Assembly: GCF_001194135.2 (NCBI RefSeq)
Contig: NC_068998.1
Coordinates: 16,841,579-16,903,274 of the forward strand
Direction: 5' to 3'
From: Octopus bimaculoides
Taxonomy: Eukaryota
Length of the DNA: 61,696 bases
Part shown: piece by piece, positions 6,158 to 34,051 of the stretch
Numbering within the stretch: the first letter of the stretch is position 1
Layout: each line of letters starts with the position of its first letter
Notes under the pieces: model-generated
The model's database searches: none
The model's input: the letters and a program-made list of their open reading frames with translations, nothing else
What the model was told of the DNA's origin: nothing
Position numbers and translations under genes: made by a program

Positions 6158-9100
6158 NNNNNNNNNNNNNNNNNNNNNNNNNNNNNNNNNNNNNNNNNNN
6201 NNNNNNNNNNNNNNNNNNNNNCACCAGAAGGGAAGCTAGAAGACAGGTTTACTTACATGCATACATACATAAATACAAACAAAAATACCTTGTTGTTGAT
6301 ATTGAAATTCTAATGGAGGAGCCTAGATTAAAAACCAGCTCTTTCTCTATTGGCAAGAAGTCTTGAAATAAAACTGAACAATCATACATAAAAACGTATG
6401 CGATGGACTTCCACACATTTCTGTCAACCGGATTTCCTCGCAAGGCATTGGTCAGCTTCAGGCTATATAGTACAAGACACTTGCTCCAGGTGCCTCACAG
6501 TGGGACTGAACTGGAAACCACATGGTTGCAAAGTTAGCTTCTTAACCAGGCACCCATTCCTGCTCCTTTATCAGTTTATTTATGGTGATTATTTTGGGGT
6601 CGATCTATTTTCATTTTTGTCCTTTTTTCTTTTATCTTCCTTATAAAGGGATCAGAAACTTCATGGAACACATCAGCTAGCAGTAATGAGAGCCCTAGTT
6701 CTCAGTATAGTAGCTTTCAGCACAAGGGCAAAGATCAACCTTACATGTTCTTTCAGTATGAAAGTGGCGAGAAAGGTTTTCTTCATCCAGTATTTTGGAC
6801 ATCTCTTCCACACTGGTTAGATTTCTGCGTTAATTTAGGTAAGTTTCTCTTTTGACCATTTATCCTATTTCTATGTTATGGTTTTTTTTGTAGAATAGGT
6901 ACACATATCCTTGTGTGTCCTGGTTTTAGAAGAGATATACTGAGATCCTAGAACTAAAATTGATGACAGAAAGGGCATCTGGCCACTAAAATATTCTGAC
7001 ACAAAAGCCATCTAAGTTATGCCAGTATGGGGATCACACCATGTGTAGTATGCAAATTTCTTAGAGCACAAATGTAAACAAAAACATAGTCATTCTCATA
7101 TACATGCAAACACGCCCATGTACGTGCAATCACATACATGTGCATGCATATGCATTGCTGTGAATAGTCAGCTAAAGGGTCAGTTGAACAAAACTGTGGT
7201 TCAGAAATGCAATCTTGTTTACATAATGCATAACTAAACTTTACAATGTTCCGAGCCAAGGTTCTTGTATTGGGCATCTTTATTTTTTTTATGTCAATAA
7301 ATAAGCACCCCCCCACACACACACACATGAATACACACACATACTAAAATATGCATATTTTCCCATGCTTGCATTGGTTAGAAGGAATTTGTTGTGGTGG
7401 ATTTTCTATGGTCAGATGCCTTTCCTGTTGCCAACCTTCACCTGTTTCCATGTAAGGTAATATTTCCTTGTGACCAGACATGTCTTGTCACGGAAGATTG
7501 GAAATGAAGGACAGCACTTACATGATGGTGACACTCCTTTACAATTATCACACGAAGTCAAGACAAGGAGTCAGTTACATGCACATACACTCACACACAC
7601 AAACATGATAGCTTCTTTCAGTTTTTGTCTACCAAATTCACTCACAAGGTTTTGGTCAGCCCAGGGCTATAGGAGAAGATACTTGTCCAAGGTGGGACTG
7701 AACCTGGAAGTATGTGATTGGGAAGCAAGCTTCTTATCACACAGTTATGCCTGTGCCTGGAGTTTCTCTGGAGGATCTCTGGAGTAACATTACTCAACAG
7801 GGTGCATAGCTTGGAGAGTCTCTCCAGGTTGAACCACTCTACATTGAGAGTTCACATCTGTCATACAACAGACATGTGATTAGAATATTATAGGTGCCAC
7901 TCAGTGGGATTGAACCTAAAAACCTTATGGTTTGGAAGCAAACTTCTTGACATGTAAGCTGTTCCTGAACTTATTATATATATATATATATATATATATC
8001 ATCATCATTGTTTAACGTCCGCCTTCCATTGAGTCTGATAGTTCAACAGGAGCTGGCCAGATAGAAGACTACCCCAGGCTGTTGTGTCTGTTTTGGCATG
8101 GTTTTTACAGCTGGATGCCTTTCTTAACACCAACCACCCTGCAGAGTGGACTGAGTGCTTTTATATATATAGATATATATATATTTGTATATTTTTCCAT
8201 TTCAGCTGTTCCAGCTGTTACCAAAATTGAATTGGAACTTCAAGCTCGATTTTCAATTGAGTTCCTACTAAGAGAATTGCCAAACCAATTTGCAACAGTT
8301 GCACGGGACATCAACATAAAAATATTTAAACTAGTGCAAGAATCCCCACAAGACGAAATTCTGATTGGGGTGCCATATTCCATAATACGCAGCAGTGCAG
8401 TAAGTATGGTTTGCTTTAATAGATAAAATGATTGGGGCAGCTGCTATATATGTCTGTACAGTGGAATATATACGTGTGTGCATATGTATATAAATATAAA
8501 TATATATGTATATAAATATATATATATATGTATATAAATATATATATATATATATATANNNNNNNNNNNNNNNNNNNNNNNNNNNNNNNNNNNNNNNNNN
8601 NNNNNNNNNNNNNNNNNNNNNNNNNNNNNNNNNNNNNNNNNNNNNNNNNNNNNNNNNNNNNNNNNNNNNNNNNNNNNNNNNNNNNNNNNNNNNNNNNNNN
8701 NNNNNNNNNNNNNNNNNNNNNNNNNNNNNNNNNNNNNNNNNNNNNNNNNNNNNNNNNNNNNNNNNNNNNNNNNNNNNNNNNNNNNNNNNNNNNNNNNNNN
8801 NNNNNNNNNNNNNNNNNNNNNNNNNNNNNNNNNNNNNNNNNNNNNNNNNNNNNNNNNNNNNNNNNNNTATATATATATATATTTATATATAAATGTATGT
8901 ACATATATGTATACATACATACATATGCATATTGTGTGTGTGTGTAACACAATTATGTTTGTTGAATTAAAATGCTGGGTGGATAATGATATTGAACAAC
9001 CAACTCTTTTAATGAGTAATACTTATTTTGACAGTTGATGTATCTCTTTGATCTTCACTTCATCTAGTTATCTTGAACAGATATTAAATTCTTTTGGAAT

Positions 9101-13730: not shown

Positions 13731-15447
13731 TAAGAAGTTTCTTTCCCAATCACATAGTTCTGGCTTCAGATTACTCAAATATAATGCTTTTTTATTCACC
13801 TTGTTTTGAATTAATCATGCATTACCTTGTAGCTTTGATATTCTGCAGATGTGACTCATTTTTTTAATTTTCAAATGATATTGTTGGGTAGGTCTGAGAA
13901 GTTAGATCTAGTTGGTTTTGAACATAAGATAGGTATAATATTTGGGCTGGATATGACTGGTTTAAATGCTAAACTGTTAAAATCAACACAGTGAGAGTTC
14001 AAAATTAACAGCCAGAAAATCATTAACATAATGAAATTGTGAGAAACACTTAAACATGAGTATTGCACACCTGACATCCAAATTGCTATATTTTATAGAA
14101 TGGCTGTGTGTTTGCATGTGTCTGTATGTATGTATTTGTGGCTGAGGAGTTAAGGAGATTGCTTTGTAACCATGGAGTCTCAAGTTCAATCCTACTATAA
14201 AGCATATTGGACTAATGTCTTTTTCTGTAGTCTCAGTTTGACTTGAGTCTTTTGAGTGAAATTGAGGAAATGGAAACTGTGTGGAAACTTGTTGGATGGA
14301 GTATACTTGTAATTTAATGGGCTGGCCTTCTTATACACAGTCACATTGATTCTGCCTGTAGTGTTATGTTAAGTGCACATGCTGTCTGTGGAATACTCAG
14401 CTACTTATGCATTAATTCAATGATTAAGCCATTCCGTCGATTGAATGACTGAAACATTCATTATCAAAATCTATGGAGATGCATTAAATGTGTATATAGA
14501 TGTGTGTGTGTGTGTGTATAGATGTGTGTGTGTGTGTGTATGTAAGTGTGCAGATGTGTGTGTGTGTGTGTGCATGTAGGGATATATGTATGTCTTTATG
14601 TAGATATGTATGTGTATATGTGTGAATGTATGTATGTTCTTCTCTTTCTCTTTTTAATTTTAGAGTAAATTTTGACCAGCCCCCGACTTTGTAGCAAGGT
14701 TGTAAAGGAAAGAGTCTTCTTTTAACCATCATCCTTTAAATCTTTGGAAGGTTTCACAGATTTTTATAGTCCCAGATATCGTGATTATTTGTAGCATATG
14801 AATTAAGGATTTGCATTCTTTGTTAGATCCCAAGTTCAGCCATACTTTGCTCCAGGTATATATCCTGTTGCTTGCCATACCTAATAATAGGTGTGAAGCT
14901 GAAAGTGTATCTTGAGTACTGGATTTGCAAACTCCTTATCTATGGTCTATAAATGTTGTCTTTCTCTTGTATCTTTTTTACACAACCGTGTCCAAAGGGC
15001 AGCTGATTTCCGTAGCAGAACATGTTTTCTTTGTGGTGCCACACAATGATATCTGGATGGTTGTGTTTTAACTCGGTGACTTTTAATTTTTAAGTTCAAC
15101 CAATATTCTTTTGACCTGTCAGTCTCATTATGATCAGCTTCATTTGTAGGTATTTTGTTTGTTTGTTTGTTTGTTTGTATGTATGTAGGTAGGTAGGTAT
15201 TTATGTGTGTAGGTATATATGTGCGTAAATATGTATGTTAATATGTGTCTGTATGTGTGTGTGTGTGTGCATGCATGCTTGTGTGTGTTTGCATATATGT
15301 GTGTGTGTGTGCGTATGTATGTATGTATGTATATATATATATATATANNNNNNNNNNNNNNNNNNNNNNNNNNNNNNNNNNNNNNNNNNNNNNNNNNNNN
15401 NNNNNNNNNNNNNNNNNNNNNNNNNNNNNNNNNNNNNNNNNNNNNNN

Positions 15448-17899: not shown

Positions 17900-19580
17900 G
17901 GTATAGACTGTTACCTGTTCACTGACAGCAGTTTTCTTCATTCCAATACTTAACCCTTTTGATACCAACCTTCCTGAGACCACCCCCAGATTTTATGATA
18001 CAAAATTCCTGTTTTAAAGTGATCTAAATTAAAATCTACCATCAAAATTTGTTAATTTCTCTTCCAAACACCATCTTAACCCTTTAACATTCAGATTTCT
18101 TTGCCAAATGTATTACTTATTTATTCCCATTGTTTTGAATAAATCATACATTACACTGAAGTTTTGAGATTCCAGTGGTATGTTTGTATGTCTTTAGAAT
18201 AATGTTGCAGGGTAGGTGTGAGAGGTTGGATCTTGGCAGTTTTAACATAAAACAAGTGGAATTTTTGGGCTGGATATGATTAGATTAAATGCTAAAGGGT
18301 TTATTAACAAAGTTACTTTACTAAATTCTTCCTCATTTTCAAAATAAACTAAAACTATGGTTGATCTCAAGACACTGAGCCTTACAAAGGAGGTTAATGA
18401 GGACCAAGATGTCTGGTTCCTTGCTGTACTCAAGAAGACCTGCCCTGCTACAGCAAAATAGATACTGGTGCCAGAGCCACATAAAAAGTATTCATGCTAG
18501 TGCCACATTAAAAGCACTGGTGCTGGTGCCACATAGAAAGCACCTAGTACTCTCTGTGGAGTGGTTGGTGTTAGGAAGTGCATCCAGCTGTAGAAACCAT
18601 GTCAGAACACACAATGAAGCCTGGTGCAGCCTATGTCCTTACCAGCTCCAATCAAACCATCCACTCCATACCAGCATGGAAGACAGACAGTAAATGATGA
18701 TGAAAGGCAGTGTATTTCAACAAAAATATGGTAACAAAAGGGTCAATTACCTACACATTAGCTACTCACTAACAATCACCATCATACAGTGGCTACAGTC
18801 TCTCATACATTGATGTATCCAAAGAAACTGGTTGCAGTTTCTTCACACCAGGTAATATTTAAATACTCTCAGCCATTCCTATTCCATTTTTATTGGCAGG
18901 GAAAACATTCTTTTCACTAAATTTTCTTTTCTCTGCTGACTGTTATTAGTAAAGAAACCATGTTGCATAACAAAATTTGTCTTGTCTTTGACAATCTTAT
19001 GATCATTCTCAAGACAATTTCTTTTCTTTTTTTGTCTTTTACAGCAACACATCGAGAATTCCGGTTCCATCCATATGTTCCCAGTAGTTGCAACAGTAGC
19101 TTAGATAAAGGATCTGAGGGGTCCCCTACAGAGACAAAATATAATCTGTTTGCACCCCGGCAACGATTACTCTTATTACAGATCAATGACAAAAAGGTTG
19201 GTAAAAGTTTCCTTCAGAAATCTGCAACAATAATAACAACATAATACTCTTTCTAAATATGTCTGTGTCTGTTTGTCTGTCTGTCTGCACAGCGATAGCT
19301 ATGTGAGCTGTGGTTAAAAAGCTTGTTTTGCAGGGTCAGTTCCACTGCATGACACTTTGGACAAGTACCTTCTGCAATAGTCCCAGGCCAACCAATGCAT
19401 TGTAAGCAAATTTGTTTAAGCAAAACTGTGTGGAAGCCCATTATATGTATGTATATCTATATCTATCTATCTATATATATATATATTTGAGCCTGGTGTT
19501 GCCATCCGGTTTCACCAGTCCTCAGTCAAGTCGTCCAACCCATGCTAGCATGGAAAGCAGACGTTAAACGATGATGATGA

Positions 19581-20353: not shown

Positions 20354-23300
20354 TATACACCTTATAGTATTGGCATTGAAGTATTGAAGTATCTTGTTTT
20401 GAAGGAAGACAGTGTACAGACAGATTGTCTGTATATTGTCCTTTATCTTTCTGTCTGTCTTCCTTTCTTTGTCTCTATCTTGGCTGTCTACCTCTTGTCC
20501 TTTCCACCTCTGTGTCTGTCTGTCTGTCTGTATGTCTCTTCACCTAAAAAAATCAGACCAGTCTAAATCTGTTTTTATGTATTTAATATACTTCCAGATG
20601 ACATTTTTTACATACAACATAGCAGCCGATATGACAGAATCTTTTAACAAGCTCCTGAAAAACATGGTCCACTGGCAGAATGCCCGAGCTCATGTATTGG
20701 ATTGTTTGGTCACCCAGAAAATGGGACTGTATCACCACCAATCTTTTGGTGATTCCCCTGCCTTAAAAGTGAGTATCTGAAGGATAGGAAAGTGTTATTG
20801 TTTTTTTTATTTTCTCATGGAAATTAAAACTTAGTCTATTAAGTTTTTATTTTAATTTCTTTCATAATTGTTAATTGGGTTTCTTTCAGTTTAGCAGCTT
20901 ACTGGGAAACTTCACAAATGCTGGTTGGACAAAAGAAGACTCCCTGTACACACTGTAAAGTGGTTGGCATTAGGAAGGACATCCAGCCATAGAAAACATG
21001 CCAAAGCTGACTGTTATTTGGTGCAGCCCTGTAGCTTGCTGGATCCTGTCAGACCATTCAATCCATGCCAGCATGGAAAAATGGGCGTTAAATGTTGATA
21101 ATGATATCTCAGTGAATTATTTTCTTATTCATTCTTTCTCACCACTTCTTAGTCAAGTTATTCTAATCCCATGGATCTCAATCTTTTTTTTTTTGACTAC
21201 ATAGCACACCGGTGATCAAATAAGAAAAAAATAGTAGATCACTTAGCATGGAATATTTTAAAATTAAAGACTTATGAAAGAAATATAGAAAACTATTGAC
21301 TGCTTTTGTTTATGATTAAAATATTTGTCATAAGACTCCAACATTATTATCATCATTTAACATCAATCTTCCATGTTAGCATGGGTTGGATGGTTTGACA
21401 GGAGCTGATAAGCCAGAGAGCTGCACTAAGGTTCCATTGTCTGCTTTAGCATGGTTTCTGCAGTTGGGTACCCTTCCTAATGCTAACCATTTTACAGTGT
21501 GTACTGAGTGCTTTTTATGTGGCACCAGCACTAGCAAGGTCACCAAGTAACTTGCAAGACAAAGACCCCTTGGCTGGGAGAGGGAGTCGTACTGCAGGAG
21601 ATGACTTTGTGCCAGTTGAAAGATTAAAGTATAATAGATGAAAAGAGGAGATACTTAACCACCCCATTTGGAAAAGAAAGGAGGATGGAGAGATAGAGTT
21701 AGGAATATAGAGAGACAGGCAGAGTGAGAGAGAGAAATAGATGATGTTGGAGATGTATTGGGACATACGCACATGAGGAGAACATAAGTGGTATGAATTT
21801 TCTAAACCCTTAGATTATATTTTTAAAAATTTGTGATGCACCAGTACTGTGCAGTACTGAGGCTCATAGTTTGAATACCATGGTTTTAATCTTCCAAATA
21901 TTCAGCTGATTGTCAAAAATTGTAAGTCATTTTGTTAACTGTAATACTATCATAAGATACAATCAAATCTTGGGAGAGGCATTATGCCGGTAATAAACAC
22001 ACGCACTGGTTCAGTCCTTTATTAATTTATATAGTTTTTTGTTAAATTATTTCATTGCACTCTTGCAATCTCTTCAGTAACTTGTCTCTCCACTTCCATT
22101 TATTTTGAAATAAATGGAAGTGGAGAGACAAGTTACTGAAGAGATTGCAAGAGTGCAATGAAATAATTTAACAAAAAACTATATAAATTAATAAAGGACT
22201 GAACCAGTGCGTGTGTTTATTACCGGCATAATGCCTCTCCCAAGATTTAATTGTATTTCTTTCAACACACGTATCCACATCAAGAATCTTGCACACGAAA
22301 TACACATACGAAATATCATAAGATGTTATCCTTCACATCTGTAATTGTTGCCTTCTATTCTGTACCATCAGCAAAATCCTTACACACAATCTAATATGGA
22401 TGTTGACCTACTCTTGATGAAAACACACCTGCCAAAAGATGGTCTGAAGCGGAACAACAGCAGCTTATCAGGAACTATGCCCTATCCCCAGATCACACGT
22501 CCATTCGATGAAATTTACCGCAATCTGAAACCTGCACACCCGTTGCAGAATTCTCCACGCAAATTTGATATTGTTCTACAACATGGTCAACAAGCTCAAG
22601 AAATCCGAACCAATTATGGCAGAGGTAAGAAATTTCTGGAATGTTCTTTGTTTTTTTTTTATTTATTTTTTAAAATTCTACTACTACACATAAATAGCCA
22701 CCACAAGGTCCAGTTCTTGTTGCATTGTGATAGCTTGTGTGCCTCAAAGATCCAGAGATATGCCAGCAGACCATAAGCTGGACAAGTGAAAGGAGAAAGG
22801 CCAGATTAATATGGATCACCACATCCTAGTCTTAAAAACGGGTTTGTGTAGGGTCAAAACCCCTACTTAGAAAGTGGTAAAGTTATAGAAGCATCAATGA
22901 CAATTCAAAACCAACAAGACTGAGAGGAAAGCCTTCCTTCAAGGAAACATATGATATGGGGCAGCAAATGCCAAAAGGAAACTGCAAGGAAAAGCAGGGA
23001 TCCAACTGGAGAGAAACAGAAAAGACAGCCCTAAATTGAAAAGAGTGGAGAAAAGTCACCAATGGCCTGTGTCCCATTGAGAGCAAAGGGCTTTAAAATA
23101 ATGTATATTATAGGTGCAGGCATGGCTGTGTGGTAAGAAGCTTGCTTCCCAACTACATGCTTCTGGGTTCAGTCCTACCGCATGGCACCTTGGGCAAGTG
23201 TCTTCTACTATAGCCTTGGGCCAGCTGAAGCCTTGTGAGTGGATTTGGTAGATGGTAACTGAAAGAAGCTTGTCATGTGTGTGTGTGTGTGTGTGTATAC

Positions 23301-26166
23301 TCGCATGTGTGTGTCTTTGTGTCTGTGTTTGTCCTCCACAACCACTTGACAAACAGTGTTGGTGAGTTTACAGATCCGTAACCTAGCAGTTTGACAAAAA
23401 AAGACTGATAAAATAAGTACTACCCTTCCATCTCCACAGACATTATCACAATTTTTGAATCATGGCCTGTAAAAGTAAATTATAGAAATGACTCAGTGTT
23501 GATTGTGATAAAAATGAAGGAAGATAGTTTGCTATTTGTACTATGTATTTTAATTCTGTTACTAAACCTTATAAATAAATTTATTGTCTTATATCCTTCA
23601 ACAGATATTGATAAAGTGTTCAAGCTGAAAGAATTACATGCTATGTGGTTTTCAAAGAACTGGGCACCAATATCAGTAAGATATCCTCTTGATTTACATT
23701 TTTTACCTTTTTTTAAGTTTTCTGCAAAGGATAGAATTCTCTTTGCTAAATTCATCTAACAAGAGTTTGTAAGAACCTATTGCTATATTGTAATATTTAC
23801 CAAACTATTTTTTTTTTTTGTTACTAGCAGTCTTTTAATGACTTTCAGATGAACAAACAAACAAACAAAAAGACATATTTTAAAGTAGTTTAAAAAATAG
23901 AGACTGTTTATTTGTATAGGAACAGGATTGGCTATGTGGTTAAGAAGCTTGTTTCCTAATTGTGTGGTCTTGGGTTCAGTTCCACTTCACAGCTTTTTGG
24001 ACAAGTGTCTTCTACTACAGCCTGGGCCAACTAAAGCTTTGTGAGTGGATTTGATATATAGAAAATGAAAGAAGCTCATTGTATGTGTGTGTGTGTGTGT
24101 GCATGTGTTTATCCCTGCCTAGACTTCATATAATGGTTTGAAAAGCATATCTAGCTAAGAGGAAATATTTGCTTGGAAACAGGTAAGAGCTGACAACGGG
24201 TTGTAGGGAATGTGTCTGAACACATACCGACTGATCTATGCAAGCATGGGAAATTGAAAGTTAGAATGATGACAATGTTTATGAATTAGGGCCTGTAATG
24301 AAATTTAAACATAGCACTGAATGTGCCAGAAAAATGTCCTATCTATAGAGTAAGAAAGAATATTGTTAATGTTGAATGTATAGTGTGTTTCTTCTTGGTA
24401 ATAAATGTCATCTGGAGGATGTCAAAATCTATAACTAGCAGGCGTAGTTAAATGAGAGAGAGAAGCTAAAATGTGTTTAACTGTGTGTCTAACATGGTGA
24501 GGTTAGTTTCTTCTATTTCAACAACGGAAACTTGTTGAGATGCGTACATCTTGTAAATATATCTAACTTCATTAGACATGGTTTGAACTGGTACTAGCTG
24601 AAACATCACCAAGTTTATATGTCCATTTTCCAAAATCTTAAACTTGTATGCAATTTTGGCCACTTATGAAGATTTTCTCATAGTATATCATTGTCATCAT
24701 CAACATTTCATTTTAATGTCCACTTTTTGATAATTGCATGGGTTAGAAGAAGTTTATTGAGGCAGGTTTTTCTATAGCTGGATGCCCTTCCTGTCTCTAA
24801 CCCTCTCCTGTTTCCAAGCAACGTAATGTTTACCCATGGCCAGACATGTTTTGCAGTATATTGGAAATGCATGTATGACAGTGACACTCATTTACAACTA
24901 CGTGCAATTTCATGACAAAGGGGCACAAATACACACACTCTCACACAGGGATGGACGGATGGACATACATATTATTATTATTATGCTCCTGTGCAGGTGG
25001 CACATAAAAAACACCATTTGAACATGGCCGTTGCCAGTACCGCCGGACTGGCCCTCATGCCAGTGGCACGTAAAAAGCACCCACTACACTCTCGGAGTGG
25101 TTGGCGTTAGGAAGGGCATCCAGCTGTTGAAACTCTGCCAAATCAGATTGGAGTCTGGTGTAGCCATCCGCTTCACCAGTCCTCAGTCAAATCGTCCAAC
25201 CCATGCTAGCATGGAAAGCGGACGTTAAATGATGATGATTATAATAATAATAATAATAATAATAATAGTAATATAAGAATGTTGGTAACAGTGACTTCAG
25301 AGTTTCAGCCAGTTAAGCCATCGTCTGATGATGGCTTAGCTTGCTGAAACTTCAAAGTCACAGTCAATAACATTCCTGGCTAAGAATAATAAATTTGTAC
25401 TCTACAAAAGTATTGAGTAACCCATCAGATTAATGTAAAATTGTTTTTATTATAACTGAACATAAAAACAAAACATTCACAATATATATATTTATATGAA
25501 AGGCTTCCTTCAATTTCCACCTACTAAATTCACTCACAAGGCCAGTCTGGTGCGATAGTAGAAGTCACCCAAGATGCATGTTGTGGGACTGAAACCAGAT
25601 CCATGTGGTTGGGAATCATTCTTCTTACCTCACAGCAACACCTGCACCTATTGTAGTTTATAAATAAACTGTCCCATGAACTTTTCACCACACAAATCTG
25701 ATTGTTATAAGGAAGTGGAAATGGCAACTCAAATAGTTACATATAAAAACAGAAATATCTCTGTCATGACTAGAAGCTTAGAAATGACATATTTATGTAG
25801 ACTCTCTTGATAAATGAAATGAAACAGAAGTTTCCTTGAATTTTGACTGGAATGTGTATTATCTTACAGGAGGACATAGTGCATTTGCTGAAACAGTCAA
25901 CACGGCTCTTGCACTATTGTGCCACACCACTGCTATTTTCTCCAGCTTGGCGTAAAGAAGTCCTCAGGAGAGTACCTTCCAAAAAACCAGAGCTAACATC
26001 AGCTTCATTTGTGCAAGAGAAAACTGAAACCAAAGCAGTGCGTTACCTCTGTTTTTTTTTTATTATTACTTTTTCTTTCATATTCTTTTTGTCTTGAAAT
26101 TTGTTTTATTTTATTGTTTATCTTTGAAATCTTCTGAAATGCTATTTGTTTGCACCCACCTCTATT

Positions 26167-26231
<65 letters not shown>

Positions 26232-27179
26232 GGGATCAGCAAATATGTTTAATTATGTTTAATTATGTTTATAAATGTATATGAACTTTTAAATAAGTTN
26301 NNNNNNNNNNNNNNNNNNNNNNNNNNNNNNNNNNNNNNNNNNNNNNNNNNNNNNNNNNNNNNNNNNNNNNNNNNNNNNNNNNNNNNNNNNNNNNNNNNNN
26401 NNNNNNNNNNNNNNNNNNNNNNNNNNNNNNNNNNNNNNNNNNNNNNNNNNNNNNNNNNNNNNNNNNNNNNNNNNNNNNNNNNNNNNNNNNNNNNNNNNNN
26501 NNNNNNNNNNNTATATAAAACAAATAATAAATGAGTATATGCATATATACGTACAGGTATGTGCATACCTACATCTACCTGTATATATAGGTGCATATCT
26601 GGGTACAGGACATTGCAAACAAAACGTAGACAAAAAAATAATAATAACCAGAGTACAGAAAACACACAGGCCACATAGAGAACATTTTCCTTCATCAGCT
26701 GCCACCATTCTAACACAGGCGTTTCGAAGAGTTAGGGCAGGACGCATCGTTAAAATGGCTCTTCTCACAGACCACAAACTAAATTTGTACCCACACATAT
26801 ATATATACATTGTGTGTGTGTGTGTGTGTGTAGAACAGATAAGAGAAATGATGTTTGTGTATGTATATTTTATATATGTGTTAATATTAATGTAACACCT
26901 ATTATATAACTAACAAGATTATGAAACAGCTGTAAATATATGGAATAAACATGTATCATTCACATCACTTCACTTATATTTTGATTTATATACATTTTTC
27001 TCCACCATTGTACCTCCTGGATTTTCAGAATGATGTTGAGGGTTACTCTAATCTCTGCTATAGTTGCTCACATATATATATCTATTTATGAAAAAGTTAT
27101 TTGATACAATAGTAGTATGTTAATAATTTATTTCAGCTGATCAAATAACCAGAATAATTATCCATGTATGCATGCATGC

Positions 27180-27315: not shown

Positions 27316-30300
27316 TCCCCTCTAAACTGAAAACTAAATATCTCCTCTTTCTTTCTCTCTTTCTCTAGGCTACAGTCACCAAAAGTGTAAGTTTATTTCG
27401 ATTTCCTCTAATAAACTTTTATTTAAGTTTGACTGAGCTCTTAGTATACAAACAGTACTAAAATGAAGGAATAAGTAAGGTGTTAAACTTTGAGCCCCTG
27501 TGTCTTGAACACTTTCTTTTTTATGGGCTTTATTTAGTACCCCTTCAGTAGGGAATAACATACCAGCTGTTCTGAGAAGTAGACACTCATGGTGGTTTTA
27601 TTGCAATACCTCTATAATCATTAGAATCTAAACAGGCATAATGTTTAAATAATTACATACATTACTTTATGGTTTACTAATTCTTTGTGAATGAATTAAT
27701 TAAAAATGCACCATTTATTGCTGAAGTAACAAGAATGAGCCAAAAACTGAAATAGGAGCATCAGCTACTATAACAGTTGACAGCAAGAAAGGAATCTTGA
27801 GTTCATTTATATCAGCAGTCATTATGAAAATTATATCAATGAAGGAGCCTCTATGGCTTTGCTTGTCTGGTTAGAAATAGCAACCAAATTTCTTTCATAT
27901 CATACTTCATAATCTTATAAATGGTTAATGTGATCCTGACTTCCCAGCACATAGGTAAAACAGGGGATGATCATAGCATAGATCTACTTATCGAGGTTCA
28001 TTTGAAGGCTAGACAATACTAACAGGAACCGGGCTACATAATTTTCCATGTTATAGAAGTATTGTATTGCTTAATATTTGATTATAACTTAGTATTCCAT
28101 TGTGTAGAACCCAATTTTCTTATTGGATTTCATGTTATGTCATTGAGAGAATAGGTTTTGTGCCATGTAATGGCAAAATTCTCAAGAACACAACACTTCT
28201 GTCATGCAAAAAATGCTTCTAATTATCTAACTTAAAATTGAAAAGACAGCAAGTTGGCAGAATCATTAGCATGTGGGACAAAATGCTTAACATCATTCCT
28301 TCTGGCTTTACATTCTCAGTTCAGATTCTGCCAGAGTTAACTTTGAAGTCAATAAAATAAATACCAGTTGAGCATTGGGGCTGATGTAATTGACTGGCCC
28401 ACTCCCCCAAAATTTCAGATATTGTGCCTACAGTTGAAAGAATTATTTAATTTACCTTTGTGTAGAATCACTAGTCTTGATTATTCCATTTGATGCATGG
28501 TTACTGATTCACGTAACTTTTTCTTACTCTCTCTGTTAGTATATTTCTCCTACCAGGTTTATCTCAAATTCATTTTTGTAAATTCTGTTACTTTTTTCTT
28601 CTTTTTTTTTTAAATCAAACAGCGTTCTCGACATAGTTCTGGAGCATCAATAGCCAGTTTGCTCTCCAAACGGCATGAAACCAGTCAAGAGGGCAAGAAG
28701 AAAGACCGCTTCTCTCAAGATAGCATGGAGTCTCCTCAACAAAAGAACTCTTCCATTGAATCTACTCAAGAGGAAGAAGACTGGCACAAAGAGATTCGCA
28801 AGAAGTTTCTTTCTCAATATATGCAACATCTTCAGTCCCTGGGGTTCTTTCCCATCCAAACTCGGCCTGCTTCTCCAAAACGAAAGTAATTTCTTTCTTT
28901 CTTTTTTCTCCTTCCCTCCCTTCATTCCTTTGTCCCTCCCTCTCTCATTCCTTTCTTTGCTTGTTTTCATTTTCTTTTTCTCCTTTCTCTCTCCTTCCCT
29001 TCATCTCTTTTTTTTCTTTCATTCATTCATTCATTCTTTTTCTTTTCCTTGTTTGTTTATTTCAAATCTGTGAATGAAAAAACTATAAGTTGAAGATGCT
29101 GAACAGTTACAATACTGGAACCCTGTTCTTTGGTTTCCTTTTTTGTTTTTCTGTATTCATTTGGCATATTGATCAGGGAAAGAGAGAAGACAATCCTCAC
29201 AACCTTTATAAGATCGCTGAGGTTGATGTTCTACTTGAATATTTGTAGATAAAGCAGAATCGTGGAATCCCTCAATATAGTATAAGGTGTCAAGCCGGCA
29301 GAATTGTTAGAACACTATTGCACTATTCATTCCAGCACTTTGCACTCTGAGTTCAAATATCAGCAAAGTCACTTTTGTGTTTCACCCTTCCAGAATCAAC
29401 AAATAAATTCCTAGTCCAGAGAATTGGATTGGAGGAATAATTAGAGTGTTAGATGAAATATCTTGAGTATTGTTTCTACCTCTTTGCATCTTATGTTCCA
29501 CCTAGACACCCATCTGTTTTCTTCTTGTGTCCTCCACTCCCTATAGAGCATAGACCATTGACAGCTTTGTTCTTTATTCTAGGTTGTTTTTCCCTTCCCA
29601 AGGCCTTCCTTTCCCAAGGCCTTCCTTTCCCAAGTCTTGTTGGTTTTTTTGAATTGTCATCAATGCTTTTGTAACTTGGCAATTTTTCTAGATAGGGGTG
29701 TTGGTCCTATGCAAACCCATTATTATGTCTGGGAAGAAGTGGTCCATATTACTCTGGCCTCTGTCCTTAGACCTGTCCAGTATGAGATGCCCTACAAGGA
29801 GTTTGTGCCCTGCTGGCATAGCTCTCAGGATCAATGAGACATACAAGCCACCACATTGCAACAAGTACTGGACGAACCTTGTGATGGACCTAGGCACCAG
29901 TGACCAGGGTTAATCAGCTGGCCATTGGAGCACGTTATCCAAATTGCATTTAGTCAATGTGGGTAGGTGGATCTACAATGAACAAAGATGAGCCAACAAT
30001 ACCTACCAGGGGAAGGAGGATCTAGCCATGAATCAGATGGAAATGGATGAGGAGGGGGTCCCCAGAGAGTGAAAGTCCTGGGGTGGAAAGAACAACAAAG
30101 TCTGAGATTTGAGACATCCAGTAAGAGTGATGAAAAGAGGAAAGATGGATAGTTTAGGTAGGAGCGTGTGAAGAGGGAGCATGGAACTAAGAAGTTTGTT
30201 TATTTGAAAGAGCAGAGGCTATTGTAATAGTGATCCTTAAATGTAATTTGATAGATAGAAACTGTACTACTGAAACCCTTCAAATGTGTGTGTTTGTTTG

Positions 30301-30581: not shown

Positions 30582-33500
30582 CGCATGCGATAAGATTCTT
30601 TCAGTCAAGGAATAAAATACCCTACTTGAAAAACATGGAATATCTCATCCAATCAAATCTCATCCAATCAAATCTCATCCAATCCATCCCAGCATCTAAA
30701 ATGCAAACATTGAAATGGTGGTGGTGGTAGTGTTGTTGGCAACAGAAGCAGCGGCAGTCTTATATCTTATAGTATTTAGTAACATTTCAGATCTAGTCAT
30801 TTTCATTCACTGTTGCAGAGGTGATGAATTCAGTAGCTGTCAAGTATTGGTAGGTATCAGCAGATAAACAACAGACAAAATTCTTTGTTGGTATTCAGCT
30901 ATATTCCCTTATGTTCTGAGTTCAAATTCCATCAAAGTCATTTACTCCCCAAGGTTCAATGAAATAAGCAACATTGAAGCAATGGGTTTGATTCCATCGA
31001 TTCCAGACTTTATACGTGTTTTAAAAACCCATTATTGATTTTATTTTGCAGCAATAATCGTCAGCCCTTAAAGAAACTGCCATCAGACCAGTCACGAAAC
31101 TCCCGAGAGGATGCAGAAAAACAAAAGAAAGAAGTATATGACATGCAAAAGACACTGCCGGGTGGTATGATTCTAATGGAACTCAGTTTCAGTGACCAAC
31201 ATTACTATGTTAAACTGTATGGTTATGACTGCTCTCGAATGGGAACTAACGTCAATTCTCAGGTACAATAACATTATTACCCTCAGGTTACGTTACTACT
31301 TTGACAATGTTGTTATTGGCTTCTAAGACTGTTTAAAGTCACCATCATTGTTTAATGTCAGTTTTCCCTCTTAACATGGGTTGGATAGTTTGACAGGAGC
31401 TGACAAGTGAGAAGATTGCACCAGTCATTTCACTGAGTGTACTGGGTGCTTTTTACATGGCATTGGCACCAGTGAAGTCATCAAGCAATTTGCAAGACAA
31501 GACCTCTCGAGTGAGGTAGGGTGTAGAATTGAAGGATGTGGCTTCGTGCCAAGTGATGAGAGGTTAAAGAATGATAGAGGGACAGAAACAGGTGTCGTCC
31601 AGTAGAGGAGATACATGGCTACCCCAACTGGAAAAGGAGAGAAGACAGTGAAGAAGTATGAAGGCATACCCTCAAGTTACAGAAAGGTGAACATTAGAGA
31701 AATGGTCCAGAGGAGTGGATAGGGTGAATGGGTTAGGTCAGTTTATGAAAATGCGAAAGTAAAGTGGTAGATGGTGAATATATATATTTCCAAGTAGCCC
31801 CAAAATGAAAATAAATTATTTTTGTTAAAATACTAACAACCCATTCCACATTGCAGAAACATTGCATTTCTGAAAAATCTTACCATAATTTGAGATTCTG
31901 TTGCATGAAGTATATTTTCCATTTAGCTCCATGTAACATGGCAGTCAATGGAAAATACATGTTGTGTTACAGAATTCCACATTATTGGTAGGATCATCAG
32001 AGAAATGTCCTGTGGTATTTCTTCCAGCTCTGCCTTCTGATTTCAAAACTTTATGGGATCAGCTTGTCTTTCACCCTGTAGCCAGAGTATGAAAATAAAC
32101 AAATTTTTTGGTGTTAAAATACTAACAACCCTTTCTACATTACAGAAACATTGTGTTTCTGAAAAATCTTGCCATAATTTGAGATTCTGTAACATGATGA
32201 GATCAGCTTTGTCTTACTTCCTGATGGGGGTCGATAAAATAATTTACCAGTTTCACCCCGGCTAACATCTTCCTTTTAAAATTACTGGTCTTTTACCTAA
32301 ATCTAATACAATTATTATTGTTATTGTTGCTGCTGCTGCTGGTTGTAACTTGTTGTTGTTAAGACAGAGAACTGGTAGAACCATTAGCACGCCAGGCAAG
32401 ATGCTTAGCAGCATTTCTTCTGAGACTTTGCCTTTCATCCTTTCTGGGTTGATAAAATAAGTATCGAGGGAGTCCTGAGAATGATGTAATTAACTTCCCC
32501 TCCCCCTGAAGATCAGCTGACCCTGCACCAAAATCTGAAACAATTATTAATATTATCATTATCATTATTTATTTGTTTGTACGTTTTTTTACAGTTGCGT
32601 CTCTACTTTGTGGATGAATGCGACACTTACCGAGCCTTAACCCATGTGCATTCCTTTGCACATGACTTCCATCTGCAGTGCATCATGTCTCATATAGCTG
32701 GAGTGCAAGATATTTTCCTTAAAGATTATCATCTTACTAACTTCCTATTGGATTTTCTTGAAGTCTATCCAACACCTCCCAACTTCTCAAGAAATTATGT
32801 TCACAGAGGTTTGTTTAACATCTACAATTTTGGATTTACAAATATCTCTTTCACTCTTACCTCTTTCTTTCTTACTCAAACTTCCGTGCTCTTTTCTGCT
32901 TTTATCATAAATAGTGCATTAAACAAATATGTATACACAAACACATACACACACACACACACATACATACAGGGTGGGCCAAAAGTCATGAACCAAAACA
33001 TTCGACATTTTATTTATATTACGTTATTATTATTTTGTTCATCAAGTATGTATGTATTGGGTCATCCCATAAAAAATGCGTTTTTTTATACTACTTTTAT
33101 TTTTCAAAATTAAGGCAAAGTTCTTTTTTAATCTGAAATATACTCTCCTTCATTTTCTACAATGCTTTTCTATCTATCTGATAGACTTGCAAGGCCTCCC
33201 TTCCAAAATTACACTTATACTGATGTCAGACTCATAGCTGCAATACCCTCTGTGTTGTATTAATGTAACCAAGAATACTTATATAAATGATACAATAATA
33301 CTTATTGCATCATTCTGTTTTTGCTTTTCAATTTGTTTCTGACACTTTTTCTTTTTCCTGTCTCTACAGCCCGTATCCAACTGACAAATTTGACTTGTCC
33401 AAGTGGCCAACTGTATGACTATATCCTCAAACATCCAAACCTGCATGATTTCACAGTCATTCAACAGCAGGCAGCTGCTCACACTGATTCAGAACTAGAT

Positions 33501-34051
33501 CTAGTAAGAAATTCAATATTTCCATCTTTGTTTCTTATTCTCTTGATACATTTCATCACACATCTATTGTTCTATTCAAATATAACCTTGTCTTTTATTT
33601 AACTAATTGATCGTGTGTGTGTGTGTGTGTGTTAAATCACTAAGGTTCAAGTCTGGTCATGAAAGCCACAGCCTTGTGGACAGCTCATCAGACCATACAA
33701 AGACAAGTTTAACTCTTCACCTCTATATACATACGCTTCTGAGTGAAGTGTTGGTCGGAGTACAGAGTTGTAATAAAGACAGAGATGACAAAGGAATAAA
33801 ATGATTATCTTAATGAGCTTTATTAGCATGCTGCTGTTTCTACTATAATATGAGTAATCCTGCAATAGCCAGTGTCCCTTCCAAGTGGGGAATATATATG
33901 CCATGGAAACTGGGAAACCAGCCCTTATGAGTCAGCTTGACTCGAGAAGCAAACTTTACCTTAATTTTTTTACTGAACTATGAGTAGTGGAAATAGCAGT
34001 CAACTAATAAAGTTCATAAGATAACTAATTTTCTTCCTTTGTCATCAATGT

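What the first reader, a model, noticed from the sequence alone, without database searches (positions are those of the whole stretch)
21948..22324. Young 300-bp palindrome with a hammerhead ribozyme in each arm, just upstream of an SZT2 exon
Seen: the arms 21957-22105 and 22108-22256 are reverse complements at 148/149 positions with a 2-nt loop. A 57-nt tail follows, and TATCATAAGAT is repeated on both flanks (a target-site duplication candidate). Each arm has an intact CUGAAGA/stem II/GAAA/AUU/stem I hammerhead motif (22132-22172 on +, 22041-22081 on -). Known: Penelope-like elements carry minimal hammerheads in their pseudo-LTRs and insert as inverted LTR plus tail; cephalopods edit RNA heavily with ADARs. 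Inference: in SZT2 pre-mRNA this forms a 149-bp duplex ending 115 nt before the 22372 acceptor. The duplex would sequester the sense ribozyme and could recruit ADAR or supply siRNA. Its single mismatch is C21964 opposite A22249, the A-C geometry ADARs prefer.
Basis: partly seen in the sequence, partly recalled or inferred. Interest (0 to 1): 0.8.

Follow-up and report, generated by a model that had tools for sequence, protein, structure and literature searches.

The report
Penelope-type inverted-repeat insertion in SZT2 intron
A 366-base retrotransposon fragment of the Penelope type, made of two mirror-image copies that each carry a minimal hammerhead-ribozyme motif, sits in an intron of the SZT2 gene just before an exon; it is a real and tidy but ordinary kind of mobile-element insertion.

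Summary
The arms 21957-22105 and 22108-22256 are 148/149 complementary with a 2-nt spacer. A 57-nt one-sided tail follows. An exact 11-mer, found nowhere else in the window, flanks the whole unit. Each arm carries a hammerhead-like motif. A generic minimal-hammerhead descriptor hits only these two sites in 61.7 kb, against about 0.005 expected by chance. The exon 115 nt downstream is SZT2 (aligned to human SZT2, E 4e-43 overall).

The layout matches published Penelope-like element (PLE) insertions: head-to-head inverted pseudo-LTRs, an optional tail on one end only, an 8-10 bp target duplication, a minimal hammerhead with an unpaired base before stem II, and an ORF start that the tail extends.

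"Intact ribozyme" is overstated:
- No Rfam hammerhead model matches, even at E<=10.
- The 10.1-11.1 pair is A-U rather than G-C.
- Helix III is absent.

In the intron transcript the 149-bp duplex (-257 kcal/mol) abolishes the hammerhead fold.

I found no other family copy and no RT/endonuclease parent. The source organism could not be verified. The ADAR and siRNA ideas remain untested. Verdict: a new member of a known kind, of low to moderate interest.

The parts
21948..21958 (.). Left copy of the target-site duplication TATCATAAGAT. Its last 2 nt (AT) are shared with the end of the left arm.
   Evidence: Exact 11-mer direct repeat. It has only two occurrences in the window, and the chance recurrence rate is 0.14%.
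21957..22105 (-). Left arm: an inverted, tail-less copy of the 149-nt pseudo-LTR-like unit. The element's sense strand is the minus strand here.
   Evidence: Inverted repeat I1, 148/149.
22041..22081 (-). Minimal hammerhead-like motif of the left arm, on the minus strand.
   Evidence: Descriptor hit. It is the mirror image of 22132-22172.
22106..22107 (.). 2-nt spacer TG at the head-to-head junction. It may be untemplated nucleotides from a template jump or the loop of a self-primed cDNA (inference).
22108..22256 (+). Right arm: the sense copy of the 149-nt pseudo-LTR-like unit, in the same orientation as SZT2.
   Evidence: There is no further copy in the window.
22132..22172 (+). Minimal type-I hammerhead-like motif. 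Helix I is 22132-35 / 22169-72. CUGAAGA is 22136-42. The unpaired G is 22143. Helix II is 22144-49 / 22154-59 with loop AGAG. GAAA is 22160-63. UAA is 22164-66. U16.1 is 22167 and U17 is 22168. The predicted scissile bond is 22168|22169.
   Evidence: Descriptor versus shuffles. The minimum-free-energy (MFE) fold of the isolated motif is exactly helix I plus helix II, -6.1 kcal/mol. The unpaired base between A9 and 10.1, the long helix II and the short helix I are traits of PLE min-hammerheads. There is no Rfam match.
22180..22186 (+). TATA-like box TATATAA, downstream of the hammerhead and 45 nt upstream of the ATG (44 nt lie between them). This is weak evidence in AT-rich sequence.
   Evidence: Pattern scan. 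PLE pseudo-LTRs are reported to carry TATA/Inr promoters.
22231..22313 (+). ATG-initiated reading frame ([27 protein letters not shown]...) that begins 26 nt before the arm end and stays open through the whole tail. It is a possible start of the element's ORF.
   Evidence: 27 codons are open to the 3' end, as in 6.6% of shuffles. In A. vaga the pLTR holds the first 12 codons and the tail extends them to 22. The peptide has no relative in the protein library.
22257..22313 (+). 57-nt 'tail', present only on the sense copy. It ends in two 11-nt units, CACACGAAATA / CATACGAAATA.
   Evidence: A one-sided optional tail is a PLE signature, explained by two alternative internal reverse-transcription start sites.
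22314..22324 (.). Right copy of the target-site duplication.
22372..22626 (+). Host context: an SZT2 coding exon. The acceptor AG is at 22370-71 and the donor GTAAGA at 22627. A branch-point-like TTCAC (A at 22335) and the pyrimidine tract lie downstream of the insertion.
   Evidence: The translation aligns to human SZT2 residues 2719-2806, colinear with later exons that align to residues 2902-3122. Whole-query E is 4e-43. Splice context.

Best explanation
This is one retrotransposition event of a Penelope-like element (PLE), or of a short non-autonomous RNA mobilised by a PLE enzyme, into unique sequence of an SZT2 intron. The insert is 366 nt including one duplicated target copy. It consists of two head-to-head copies of the element's 3'-terminal 149 nt, which is pseudo-LTR sequence. 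That sequence carries, in order, a minimal type-I hammerhead motif, a TATA-like box and the first codons of an ORF. The copy in the SZT2 orientation continues into the optional 57-nt 'tail'. The whole unit is bracketed by a 9-11 bp target-site duplication.

Mechanism (inferred from published PLE biochemistry, not shown here):
1. The GIY-YIG endonuclease nicks both target strands about 11 bp apart.
2. Each 3' end primes reverse transcription of element RNA. One starts at the distal start site (with tail) and the other at the proximal start site (without tail). Each junction shows 2 nt of microhomology.
3. The two cDNAs are joined at the centre by a template jump, or by self-priming, that left the 2-nt spacer.

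Consequences. In the element's own RNA the motif can adopt the hammerhead helix I / helix II fold. In SZT2 pre-mRNA both arms are transcribed together and form a 149-bp near-perfect duplex, which abolishes that fold. The duplex is a plausible but untested substrate for dsRNA-binding enzymes. The insertion lies upstream of the likely branch point and pyrimidine tract, so it probably leaves splicing of the next exon intact.
For: Geometry:
- 149-nt arms, 148/149, 2-nt spacer, one-sided 57-nt tail, exact flanking 11-mer.
- The 11-mer is unique to these two sites and is unlikely by chance.
- The insert lies in sequence with no other copy in the window, between older repeats.

Hammerhead-like motif:
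- The descriptor hits only the two arms, against 0.005 expected.
- The MFE of the isolated motif and of the sense arm plus tail contains exactly helix I and helix II.

Published PLE traits that are matched:
- A min-hammerhead with an extra nucleotide between A9 and 10.1, a long helix II (6-8 bp), a short helix I (4-5 bp), and paired motifs 100-700 bp apart on opposite strands.
- An inverted 5'-truncated copy adjacent to the pLTR, and a tail at one end only.
- A. vaga elements with inverted pLTRs of 181-218 bp, 8-10 bp TSDs, a 31-bp tail on one of the inverted pLTRs, the ORF start inside the pLTR extended by the tail, head-to-head as the commonest arrangement, and palindromic junctions.
- The PAc enzyme cleaves and extends both strands, and two internal RT start sites define the tail.
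- The ORF from ATG 22231 is open through the tail.

Duplex: -257.5 kcal/mol, z = -38.8. P(helix II) is 0.0 in the intron context.
Against: - No reverse transcriptase or GIY-YIG ORF and no second copy of the arm or tail was found. This covers the window, a metagenome scan (3 hits, all one unrelated coding sequence), viral contigs and the protein library. Family membership therefore rests on anatomy alone.
- The tail is 57 nt, against the 30-40 nt usually reported.
- The hammerhead deviates from the published min-HHR regularities. 10.1-11.1 is A-U rather than G-C, and the 15.1-16.1 segment AUAAU is self-complementary only around a central A-A mismatch. No Rfam hammerhead model matches.
- Both copies break off at exactly the same element position. 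Two independent 5' truncations would not predict this. It requires a defined RNA 5' end, a template jump or self-priming.
- The ORF-start evidence is weak (6.6% by chance).
Confidence: 0.75

Rival explanations
1. A short, complete non-autonomous element rather than a truncated autonomous PLE. Under this reading the 206-nt RNA (22108-22313) is a full-length solo-pLTR or SINE-like transcript with a defined 5' end at 22108, mobilised in trans by a PLE enzyme. Both target-primed cDNAs ran to that same 5' end, which would explain the exactly symmetric palindrome. This is a sub-variant of the best explanation, not an alternative to PLE mobilisation.
For: - Both arms end at an identical position.
- In A. 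vaga, pLTR sequences alone suffice for trans mobilisation, and solo pLTRs exist.
- Animal retrozymes are proposed to be non-autonomous PLE derivatives related to pLTRs.
- The arm length of 149 (+57) nt is close to whole pLTRs of 181-218 bp.
Against: No other copy is available to define family ends. The 5' end at 22108 corresponds to neither the predicted hammerhead cleavage site (22168|22169) nor the TATA-predicted start. Self-priming of a randomly truncated cDNA gives the same symmetry.
Confidence: 0.25
2. Assembly fold-back artefact. Only one arm exists in the real genome, and the palindromic junction was created by chimeric reads or by graph traversal of a repeat.
For: - The window is a gapped scaffold with 8 N-runs.
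- PLE tandem and inverted structures are known to cause assembly problems.
- The central junction cannot be verified from a single assembled sequence.
Against: - Each arm's outer end is joined to different unique sequence: the left flank with the TSD, and the tail with the TSD. The duplicated 11-mer brackets the whole two-arm structure. A fold-back at the centre would not create these junctions.
- The arms differ at one position, so they are not one sequence read twice.
- The nearest gaps are more than 4 kb away: 15348-15447 and 26300-26511.
- No other genuine palindrome exists in the window.
- Head-to-head pLTRs are an expected natural PLE form.
Confidence: 0.06
3. A non-autonomous DNA transposon of the fold-back or MITE type, for example a Mutator-like element with long terminal inverted repeats and a 9-11 bp duplication. 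On this reading the hammerhead-like motif is incidental.
For: Long, near-identical inverted repeats and a 9-11 bp flanking duplication.
Against: - The inverted repeat is not terminal on the right. 57 nt of non-repeated tail lie between the arm and the duplication, and no alternative duplication abuts the arm directly.
- The hammerhead-like motif is far beyond chance and has PLE-specific traits.
- The asymmetry matches the PLE tail.
Confidence: 0.04
4. A host-selected hairpin RNA gene or regulatory element: an endo-siRNA/hpRNA or miRNA-like precursor, an ADAR-recruiting duplex, or a splicing modulator for the SZT2 exon. It would derive from the insertion but be kept for function.
For: - A very stable 149-bp duplex in the sense pre-mRNA lies 115 nt from an acceptor.
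- Many Rfam long-hairpin miRNA models score 40-115 bits on it.
- It has a single A-C mismatch. ADAR preference for A opposite C, and heavy editing in cephalopods, are established knowledge but were not tested here.
Against: - All the miRNA matches are below their gathering scores, occur on both strands, and are generic to any long hairpin.
- Near-identity of the arms is explained by a recent origin and needs no selection.
- No expression, editing, small-RNA or cross-species data are available.
- Inverted-repeat TE insertions in introns are commonplace.
Confidence: 0.08

Closest known systems
Endonuclease-containing Penelope-like elements (Penelope/Poseidon, Neptune, Nematis clades). The closest form is the 'inverted pLTR + pLTR (+tail) + TSD' insertion described for Pen2a_Av / Pen2_Av of Adineta vaga, together with the two-strand priming shown for Anolis PAc.
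   Same: - Head-to-head inverted pseudo-LTR copies.
- An optional extension (tail) on one end only.
- A short target duplication: 8-10 bp there, 9-11 bp here.
- A hammerhead motif inside the repeat.
- The ORF start lies inside the repeat and is extended by the tail.
- A TATA-like box in the repeat.
- An AT-rich target.
   Different: - There is no RT/GIY-YIG ORF and no direct downstream pLTR. Only the two inverted terminal copies are present.
- The tail is 57 nt, against 30-40 nt.
- The arms meet at a 2-nt spacer rather than overlapping or sharing a short palindrome.
- The parent family is not identified.
Minimal type-I hammerhead ribozymes of metazoan PLEs (min-HHR; Cervera & de la Pena 2014).
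   Same: - Core CUGANGA ... GAAA ... UH.
- One unpaired nucleotide between A9 and helix II.
- A long helix II (6 bp).
- A short, open helix I (4 bp).
- No stable helix III.
- Motifs paired on opposite strands about 90 bp apart.
   Different: - 10.1-11.1 is A-U (or G.U with a bulged A) instead of the highly conserved G-C.
- The 15.1-16.1 segment AUAAU has an odd length with a central A-A mismatch, so a dimeric helix III would be weak.
- No family alignment is available to show covariation.
- Activity is untested.
Metazoan non-LTR retrozymes (tandem ~170-400-bp repeats with canonical type-I hammerheads that are expressed as circRNAs).
   Same: A short, AT-rich, non-coding unit with a type-I hammerhead. 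These are probably mobilised by PLE machinery, and their target duplications are longer than 4 bp.
   Different: Retrozymes are head-to-tail direct repeats with canonical hammerheads (helix I 6 bp, helix II 4 bp, loop-loop contacts). Here the copies are inverted and the motif is of the minimal PLE type. No circularisable tandem unit exists.
Intronic inverted-repeat transposon pairs that form long dsRNA (for example inverted Alu pairs in primates), which are known ADAR substrates and modulators of splicing or back-splicing.
   Same: Two inverted copies of a retroelement in one intron would give a long intramolecular duplex in the pre-mRNA.
   Different: Here the two copies arose in a single insertion event, abut each other with a 2-nt loop, and are 99% identical. 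No editing data are available.

Membership tests
Penelope-like element insertion (EN+ PLE) | Hammerhead ribozyme motif located in the pseudo-LTR | tested here: met
   A min-HHR descriptor hits 22132-22172 (+) and 22081-22041 (-) only, with shuffle expectation 0.005.
Penelope-like element insertion (EN+ PLE) | An inverted (head-to-head) copy adjacent to the pseudo-LTR | tested here: met
   Arms 21957-22105 / 22108-22256, with the element 3' ends pointing outwards. Criterion.
Penelope-like element insertion (EN+ PLE) | [quoted passage not shown] | tested here: met
   A one-sided 57-nt extension at 22257-22313. The asymmetry is met, but the length exceeds the reported 30-40 bp.
Penelope-like element insertion (EN+ PLE) | A short target-site duplication flanking the whole unit | tested here: met
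   An exact 11-mer (9-11 bp once junction microhomology is allowed for). A. vaga examples are 8-10 bp.
Penelope-like element insertion (EN+ PLE) | The pseudo-LTR contains the first codons of the element ORF, and the tail extends them | tested here: inconclusive
   The frame from ATG 22231 is open for 27 codons to the end of the tail, but 6.6% of shuffles do as well. The peptide has no homologue.
Penelope-like element insertion (EN+ PLE) | A family with a telomerase-like RT plus GIY-YIG endonuclease ORF (the autonomous parent) | not testable with these tools
   The insert has no such ORF. The source genome is not available, and the protein collections reached hold no animal SZT2 or matching element.
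Penelope-like element insertion (EN+ PLE) | Multiple dispersed copies, many of them 5'-truncated | tested here: inconclusive
   There is no second copy in 61.7 kb. The metagenome hits are an unrelated coding sequence, and viral contigs gave none. The genome itself was not searched.
PLE minimal hammerhead (min-HHR, Cervera & de la Pena 2014) | Conserved core boxes CUGANGA, GAAA and UH in type-I order | tested here: met
   CUGAAGA 22136-42, GAAA 22160-63, U16.1 U17 at 22167-68.
PLE minimal hammerhead (min-HHR, Cervera & de la Pena 2014) | [quoted passage not shown] | tested here: met
   G22143 is unpaired before helix II. Criterion.
PLE minimal hammerhead (min-HHR, Cervera & de la Pena 2014) | A long helix II (6-8 bp) and a short helix I (4-5 bp) | tested here: met
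   Helix II AUUGCA/UGCAAU is 6 bp and helix I GUUA/UAAC is 4 bp. Both are in the MFE.
PLE minimal hammerhead (min-HHR, Cervera & de la Pena 2014) | A highly conserved G10.1-C11.1 pair | tested here: not met
   The closing pair is A22144-U22159. The alternative is G22143.U22159 with A22144 bulged.
PLE minimal hammerhead (min-HHR, Cervera & de la Pena 2014) | Palindromic 15.2-16.2 / loop 3 that allows a dimeric helix III | tested here: inconclusive
   AUAAU (22163-67) is self-complementary at 4 of 5 positions, with a central A-A mismatch. The cofold MFE of two motifs does not use it.
PLE minimal hammerhead (min-HHR, Cervera & de la Pena 2014) | A consensus family with covariation within the genome | not testable with these tools
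   Only the two near-identical arms are available.
Curated hammerhead ribozyme families in Rfam (types I, II, III, HH9, HH10) | The covariance-model score reaches the gathering threshold | tested here: not met
   No hammerhead hit at gathering in the window, none at E<=10 in 21800-22450, and none at E<=10 on the 66-nt motif alone.
Curated hammerhead ribozyme families in Rfam (types I, II, III, HH9, HH10) | Self-cleavage at the predicted site | not testable with these tools
   This needs an in vitro transcription and cleavage assay. Published PLE min-HHRs are weak even as dimers, and the PAc HHR is not needed for insertion in vitro.
Metazoan non-LTR retrozyme | Head-to-tail tandem repeats, each with a canonical type-I hammerhead | tested here: not met
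   The copies are inverted, not tandem, and the motif is minimal rather than canonical.
Fold-back / MITE DNA transposon | Inverted repeats are terminal at both ends and directly abut the target duplication | tested here: not met
   A 57-nt non-repeated tail lies between the right arm and the duplication.
miRNA precursor families (Rfam MIR2630, MIR3440, MIR837 and others) | The score reaches the family gathering threshold | tested here: not met
   The best score is 114.7 bits against a gathering score of 144. All hits are below threshold, occur on both strands, and are generic to long hairpins.

The most novel reading that the evidence does not exclude
The exactly symmetric palindrome may be an in vivo footprint of concerted two-strand target-primed reverse transcription by a dimeric PLE ribonucleoprotein acting on a short RNA with a defined 5' end. 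The features that fit are:
- both copies end at the same element base and are joined by 2 extra nucleotides;
- 2-nt microhomology is present at both outer junctions;
- one start carries the tail and the other does not.

On this reading the 206-nt unit is a previously undescribed solo-pLTR, SINE-like, non-autonomous PLE derivative. Its intronic 149-bp duplex would additionally act as a dsRNA (ADAR/Dicer) substrate in SZT2 pre-mRNA.
Probability: 0.15. Interest if true: 0.5.

Novelty: new member of a known kind. Interest (0 to 1): 0.25.

Why it matters
As annotation, this explains a striking 300-bp palindrome next to a coding exon as one ordinary Penelope-type insertion. It also flags the locus as one that short-read assemblers and miRNA or hairpin scanners will mis-call.

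As biology, its value is modest. It is a clean natural example of the head-to-head pLTR plus one-sided tail product that the recent in vitro work on PLE integration (nicking and priming on both strands, two internal start sites) predicts. It places a near-perfect 149-bp dsRNA in the sense pre-mRNA of a conserved mTORC1-pathway gene. If the host is a heavily editing animal, that makes an easy test case for intronic dsRNA editing, small-RNA production and splicing effects. None of this is unexpected for a specialist.

Tried and rejected
1. Rfam at gathering on the whole window, and at E<=10 on 21800-22450 and on the 66-nt motif. There was no hammerhead family. The only hits were sub-threshold long-hairpin miRNA models on both strands, rejected as generic hairpin matches.
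2. blastn of the arm plus tail against the window found no other copy.
3. An exact-pattern scan, CTGANGAGATTGCANNNNTGCAATGAAA. Metagenome contigs gave 3 hits. All three are one unrelated 45-47% GC sequence, with similarity confined to the 28 nt, lying inside a 318-aa ORF on the opposite strand. They were rejected as chance. Viral contigs gave 0.
4. I tried to reach orthologous loci or the organism through the large protein collection, using the exon peptide and then 415 aa of concatenated exons. Neither gave a hit, so a presence/absence test across species was not possible. Pfam gave nothing for the exons. The PDB sequence search did identify SZT2.
5. The 30-aa ORF-start peptide against 1.84 billion representative proteins gave nothing.
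6. The other 'long palindrome' at 8488-8932 is (TA)n around an N-gap and is an artefact.
7. I looked for published min-HHR sequences to build a dedicated covariance model. The 2014 supplement is not held and the 2016/17 dimer paper is not held, so no model was built.
8. The MITE/fold-back reading was rejected because of the internal 57-nt tail. The retrozyme reading was rejected because the copies are inverted and the motif is minimal.
Full report
**What is there**

- The arms 21957-22105 and 22108-22256 are reverse complements over 149 nt with a 2-nt spacer (TG).
- A script shows a single mismatch, C21964 opposite A22249.
- It also shows a 57-nt stretch (22257-22313) that has no counterpart on the left.
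- TATCATAAGAT occurs at 21948-21958 and 22314-22324 and nowhere else in the window on either strand.
- Across the window, an exact non-simple 11-mer recurs at the required distance at only 0.14% of positions, so the flanking repeat is not a chance feature.
- Its left copy shares its last two bases (AT) with the arm. Its right copy shares its first two (TA) with a repeated 11-nt unit at the end of the tail. The duplicated target is therefore 9-11 bp, with 2-nt microhomology at both outer junctions.

The palindrome, the duplication and the exon lie in sequence (21566-22697) that has no other copy in the window. Older interspersed repeats with many 70-85% identical copies lie on either side. The nearest assembly gaps are more than 4 kb away. 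The only other 'long palindrome' the tool reports, 8488-8932, is (TA)n on both sides of an N-run.

**The hammerhead claim**

Rfam gives no hammerhead match:
- none at gathering thresholds in the whole window;
- none at E<=10 in 21800-22450;
- none at E<=10 on the 66-nt motif alone.

What Rfam does report is a long list of plant and animal miRNA hairpin models. All are below their gathering scores and hit both strands, which is the generic response to any long perfect hairpin.

Read by hand, the motif is GUUA / CUGAAGA / G / AUUGCA-AGAG-UGCAAU / GAAA / UAA / U-U | UAAC. That is a type-I hammerhead core with a 4-bp helix I, a 6-bp helix II, one unpaired G between A9 and helix II, and no real helix III.

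I wrote a generic minimal-hammerhead descriptor: CUGANGA, 0-1 extra base, stem II >=4, GAAA, 0-6 nt, UH, stem I >=3. It hits only these two mirror-image sites in 61.7 kb on both strands. 200 dinucleotide-preserving shuffles give a mean of 0.005 sites, and none at this stem quality. The motif is therefore real and not a chance match.

The 2014 description of PLE hammerheads lists the traits that looked odd at first:
- a longer helix II (6-8 bp);
- a short helix I (4-5 bp);
- no helix III, so that activity needs a dimer;
- pairs of motifs 100-700 bp apart on opposite strands.

Two of that paper's regularities are not met. The 10.1-11.1 pair is A-U (or G.U with a bulged A) instead of G-C. The 15.1-16.1 segment AUAAU is self-complementary only around a central A-A mismatch. 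'Intact' is therefore too strong. 'PLE-type minimal hammerhead motif, activity unknown and probably weak' is what the evidence supports. Published min-HHRs cleave poorly even as dimers, and the Anolis PLE hammerhead is dispensable for insertion in vitro.

**Folding**

- The isolated motif (22128-22176) has as its minimum-free-energy structure exactly helix I plus helix II (-6.1 kcal/mol).
- The same two helices appear in the MFE of the sense arm plus tail (-30.8 kcal/mol), with helix II pair probabilities of 0.75-0.99.
- In the intron context (21940-22330) the RNA folds into one hairpin of -257.5 kcal/mol, z = -38.8 against shuffles, and the probability of helix II is 0.0.

Any one transcript also contains only one sense motif plus its antisense, so a same-transcript dimer is impossible.

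**Host gene**

The large protein collection returned nothing for the exon or for 415 aa of concatenated exon-like segments. Pfam has no model for them. The PDB sequence search identifies them as SZT2 at E 4e-43. The 22372-22626 exon aligns to human residues 2719-2806, and later + strand exons align colinearly to residues 2902-3122.

The exon has an AG acceptor at 22370-71 and a GTAAGA donor. A branch-point-like TTCAC (A at 22335) and the pyrimidine tract lie between the insertion and the acceptor, so the insertion did not remove them. I could not verify the organism.

**What it is**

The published anatomy of endonuclease-containing Penelope-like elements fits feature by feature.
- Insertions are highly 5'-truncated and often carry an inverted 5'-truncated copy immediately adjacent. 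They also carry a 30-40 bp 'tail' that is often present at only one end, and the hammerhead lies in the pseudo-LTR.
[quoted passage not shown] The pLTR contains the first 12 codons of the ORF, which the tail extends to 22. It also carries a TATA box. Head-to-head is the commonest arrangement, and palindromes at the inverted junction are interpreted as self-priming.
- The purified Anolis enzyme nicks and extends both target strands. It initiates reverse transcription at two adjacent internal sites, and the distance between them is the tail.

The present locus shows the same features:
- The copies are head-to-head, with the element 3' ends pointing outwards.
- The left copy starts without the tail and the right copy with it.
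- The duplication is 9-11 bp.
- A TATA-like box lies at 22180.
- An ATG at 22231 opens a frame that runs through the whole tail. This is weak evidence, since 6.6% of shuffles do the same, and the peptide has no relative in the protein library.

**Mechanism (inferred)**

The geometry is coherent with nicks about 11 bp apart on the two strands, each 3' end priming cDNA synthesis outward-in on element RNA.

Two independent events do not predict that both copies break off at the same element base. That requires one of three things: a short RNA with a defined 5' end at 22108, a jump of one polymerase onto the other cDNA (with the TG spacer as untemplated bases), or snap-back self-priming of a single truncated cDNA. 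I cannot discriminate among these from one locus. The 5' end at 22108 corresponds neither to the predicted ribozyme cut (22168|22169) nor to a TATA-directed start.

**Rivals**

- Assembly fold-back is unlikely. The two arms' outer ends are joined to different unique sequences, the duplication brackets the two-arm unit, and the arms differ at one base. Only long reads can settle the central junction.
- A fold-back DNA transposon is disfavoured by the 57-nt non-repeated tail inside the duplication and by the hammerhead.
- A retrozyme is excluded by the inverted rather than tandem arrangement and by the minimal motif.
- A host-selected hairpin function (editing, siRNA, splicing) is possible but has no evidence here. 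Near-identity of the arms is what a recent single-event origin predicts.
- In the element's sense orientation, the single arm difference is A (right) versus G (left), with a 5' U neighbour. That is compatible with an edited RNA template or with any transition, and at n = 1 it carries no weight.

**What is missing**

No second copy of the family and no RT/GIY-YIG parent could be found.
- The metagenome scan returned one unrelated coding sequence three times.
- Viral contigs returned nothing.
- The reachable protein libraries appear to lack this animal's genes.

Family membership therefore rests on anatomy plus the ribozyme motif, and not on homology to a named element.

**Verdict**

This is a real, probably recent, Penelope-type head-to-head solo-pLTR insertion with a one-sided tail and a PLE-style minimal hammerhead motif. 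It lies in an SZT2 intron, 47-58 nt upstream of the acceptor (the duplex ends 115 nt upstream). It is a new member of a known kind. The functional ideas are reasonable experiments but are not findings.

Noticed in passing
window 8488-8932: The repeat finder reports a 222-nt, 91% 'palindrome' with a 1-nt spacer. It is (TA)n microsatellite on both sides of the N-run 8559-8867, so N is being paired with N. It is not a real structure.
   Followed up: yes
window 20882-21105 and 21343-21565; also 23101-23399 and 22698-22935: Older interspersed repeat families flank the finding.
- 20882-21105 and 21343-21565 are an inverted pair (73% identity, 227 nt) of one family, with at least 10 diverged copies in the window (for example 50070-50272, 18517-18701, 36513-36682).
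- The 23101-23399 family also has at least 10 copies (43099-43266 at 85%).
- The 22698-22935 family has further copies at 29616-29887 and 36043-36126.

None was classified.
   Followed up: partly
window 21964 / 22249: Read in the element's sense orientation, the only difference between the two copies is A (right arm) versus G (left arm), with a 5' U neighbour and not in a CpG. This is compatible with an ADAR-edited RNA template or with an ordinary transition. It is a single event and has no statistical weight.
   Followed up: no
window 22292-22315: The tail ends in two adjacent 11-nt units, CACACGAAATA and CATACGAAATA. The second runs 2 nt into the right copy of the target duplication. Together with the AT shared at the left junction, this gives 2-nt microhomology at both outer junctions.
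   Followed up: partly
window 28614-28886, 30978-31268, 32490-33110, 33291-33599 (+ strand): Further SZT2 exons lie downstream and align colinearly to human SZT2 residues about 2902-3122 (the KICSTOR subunit). The window therefore covers the C-terminal part of a large, intron-rich SZT2 gene. Exon-like segments at 800-988 and 8016-8423 did not align to the human protein.
   Followed up: partly
L001 2451-2478, L002 5519-5546, L003 3538-3565: Three marine metagenome contigs share CTGATGAGATTGCACCGCTGCAATGAAA, a hammerhead-like box / stem II / box string. It lies inside a conserved 318-aa ORF on the opposite strand. It shows that a 23-base hammerhead-like pattern can arise in coding sequence by chance.
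   Followed up: yes
window 22109-22114 and 22190-22195 (+), mirrored on the minus strand in the left arm: AATAAA hexamers lie in the sense arm, in the SZT2 orientation. They could act as cryptic polyadenylation signals if the duplex were opened. In 33% GC sequence they are common by chance.
   Followed up: no
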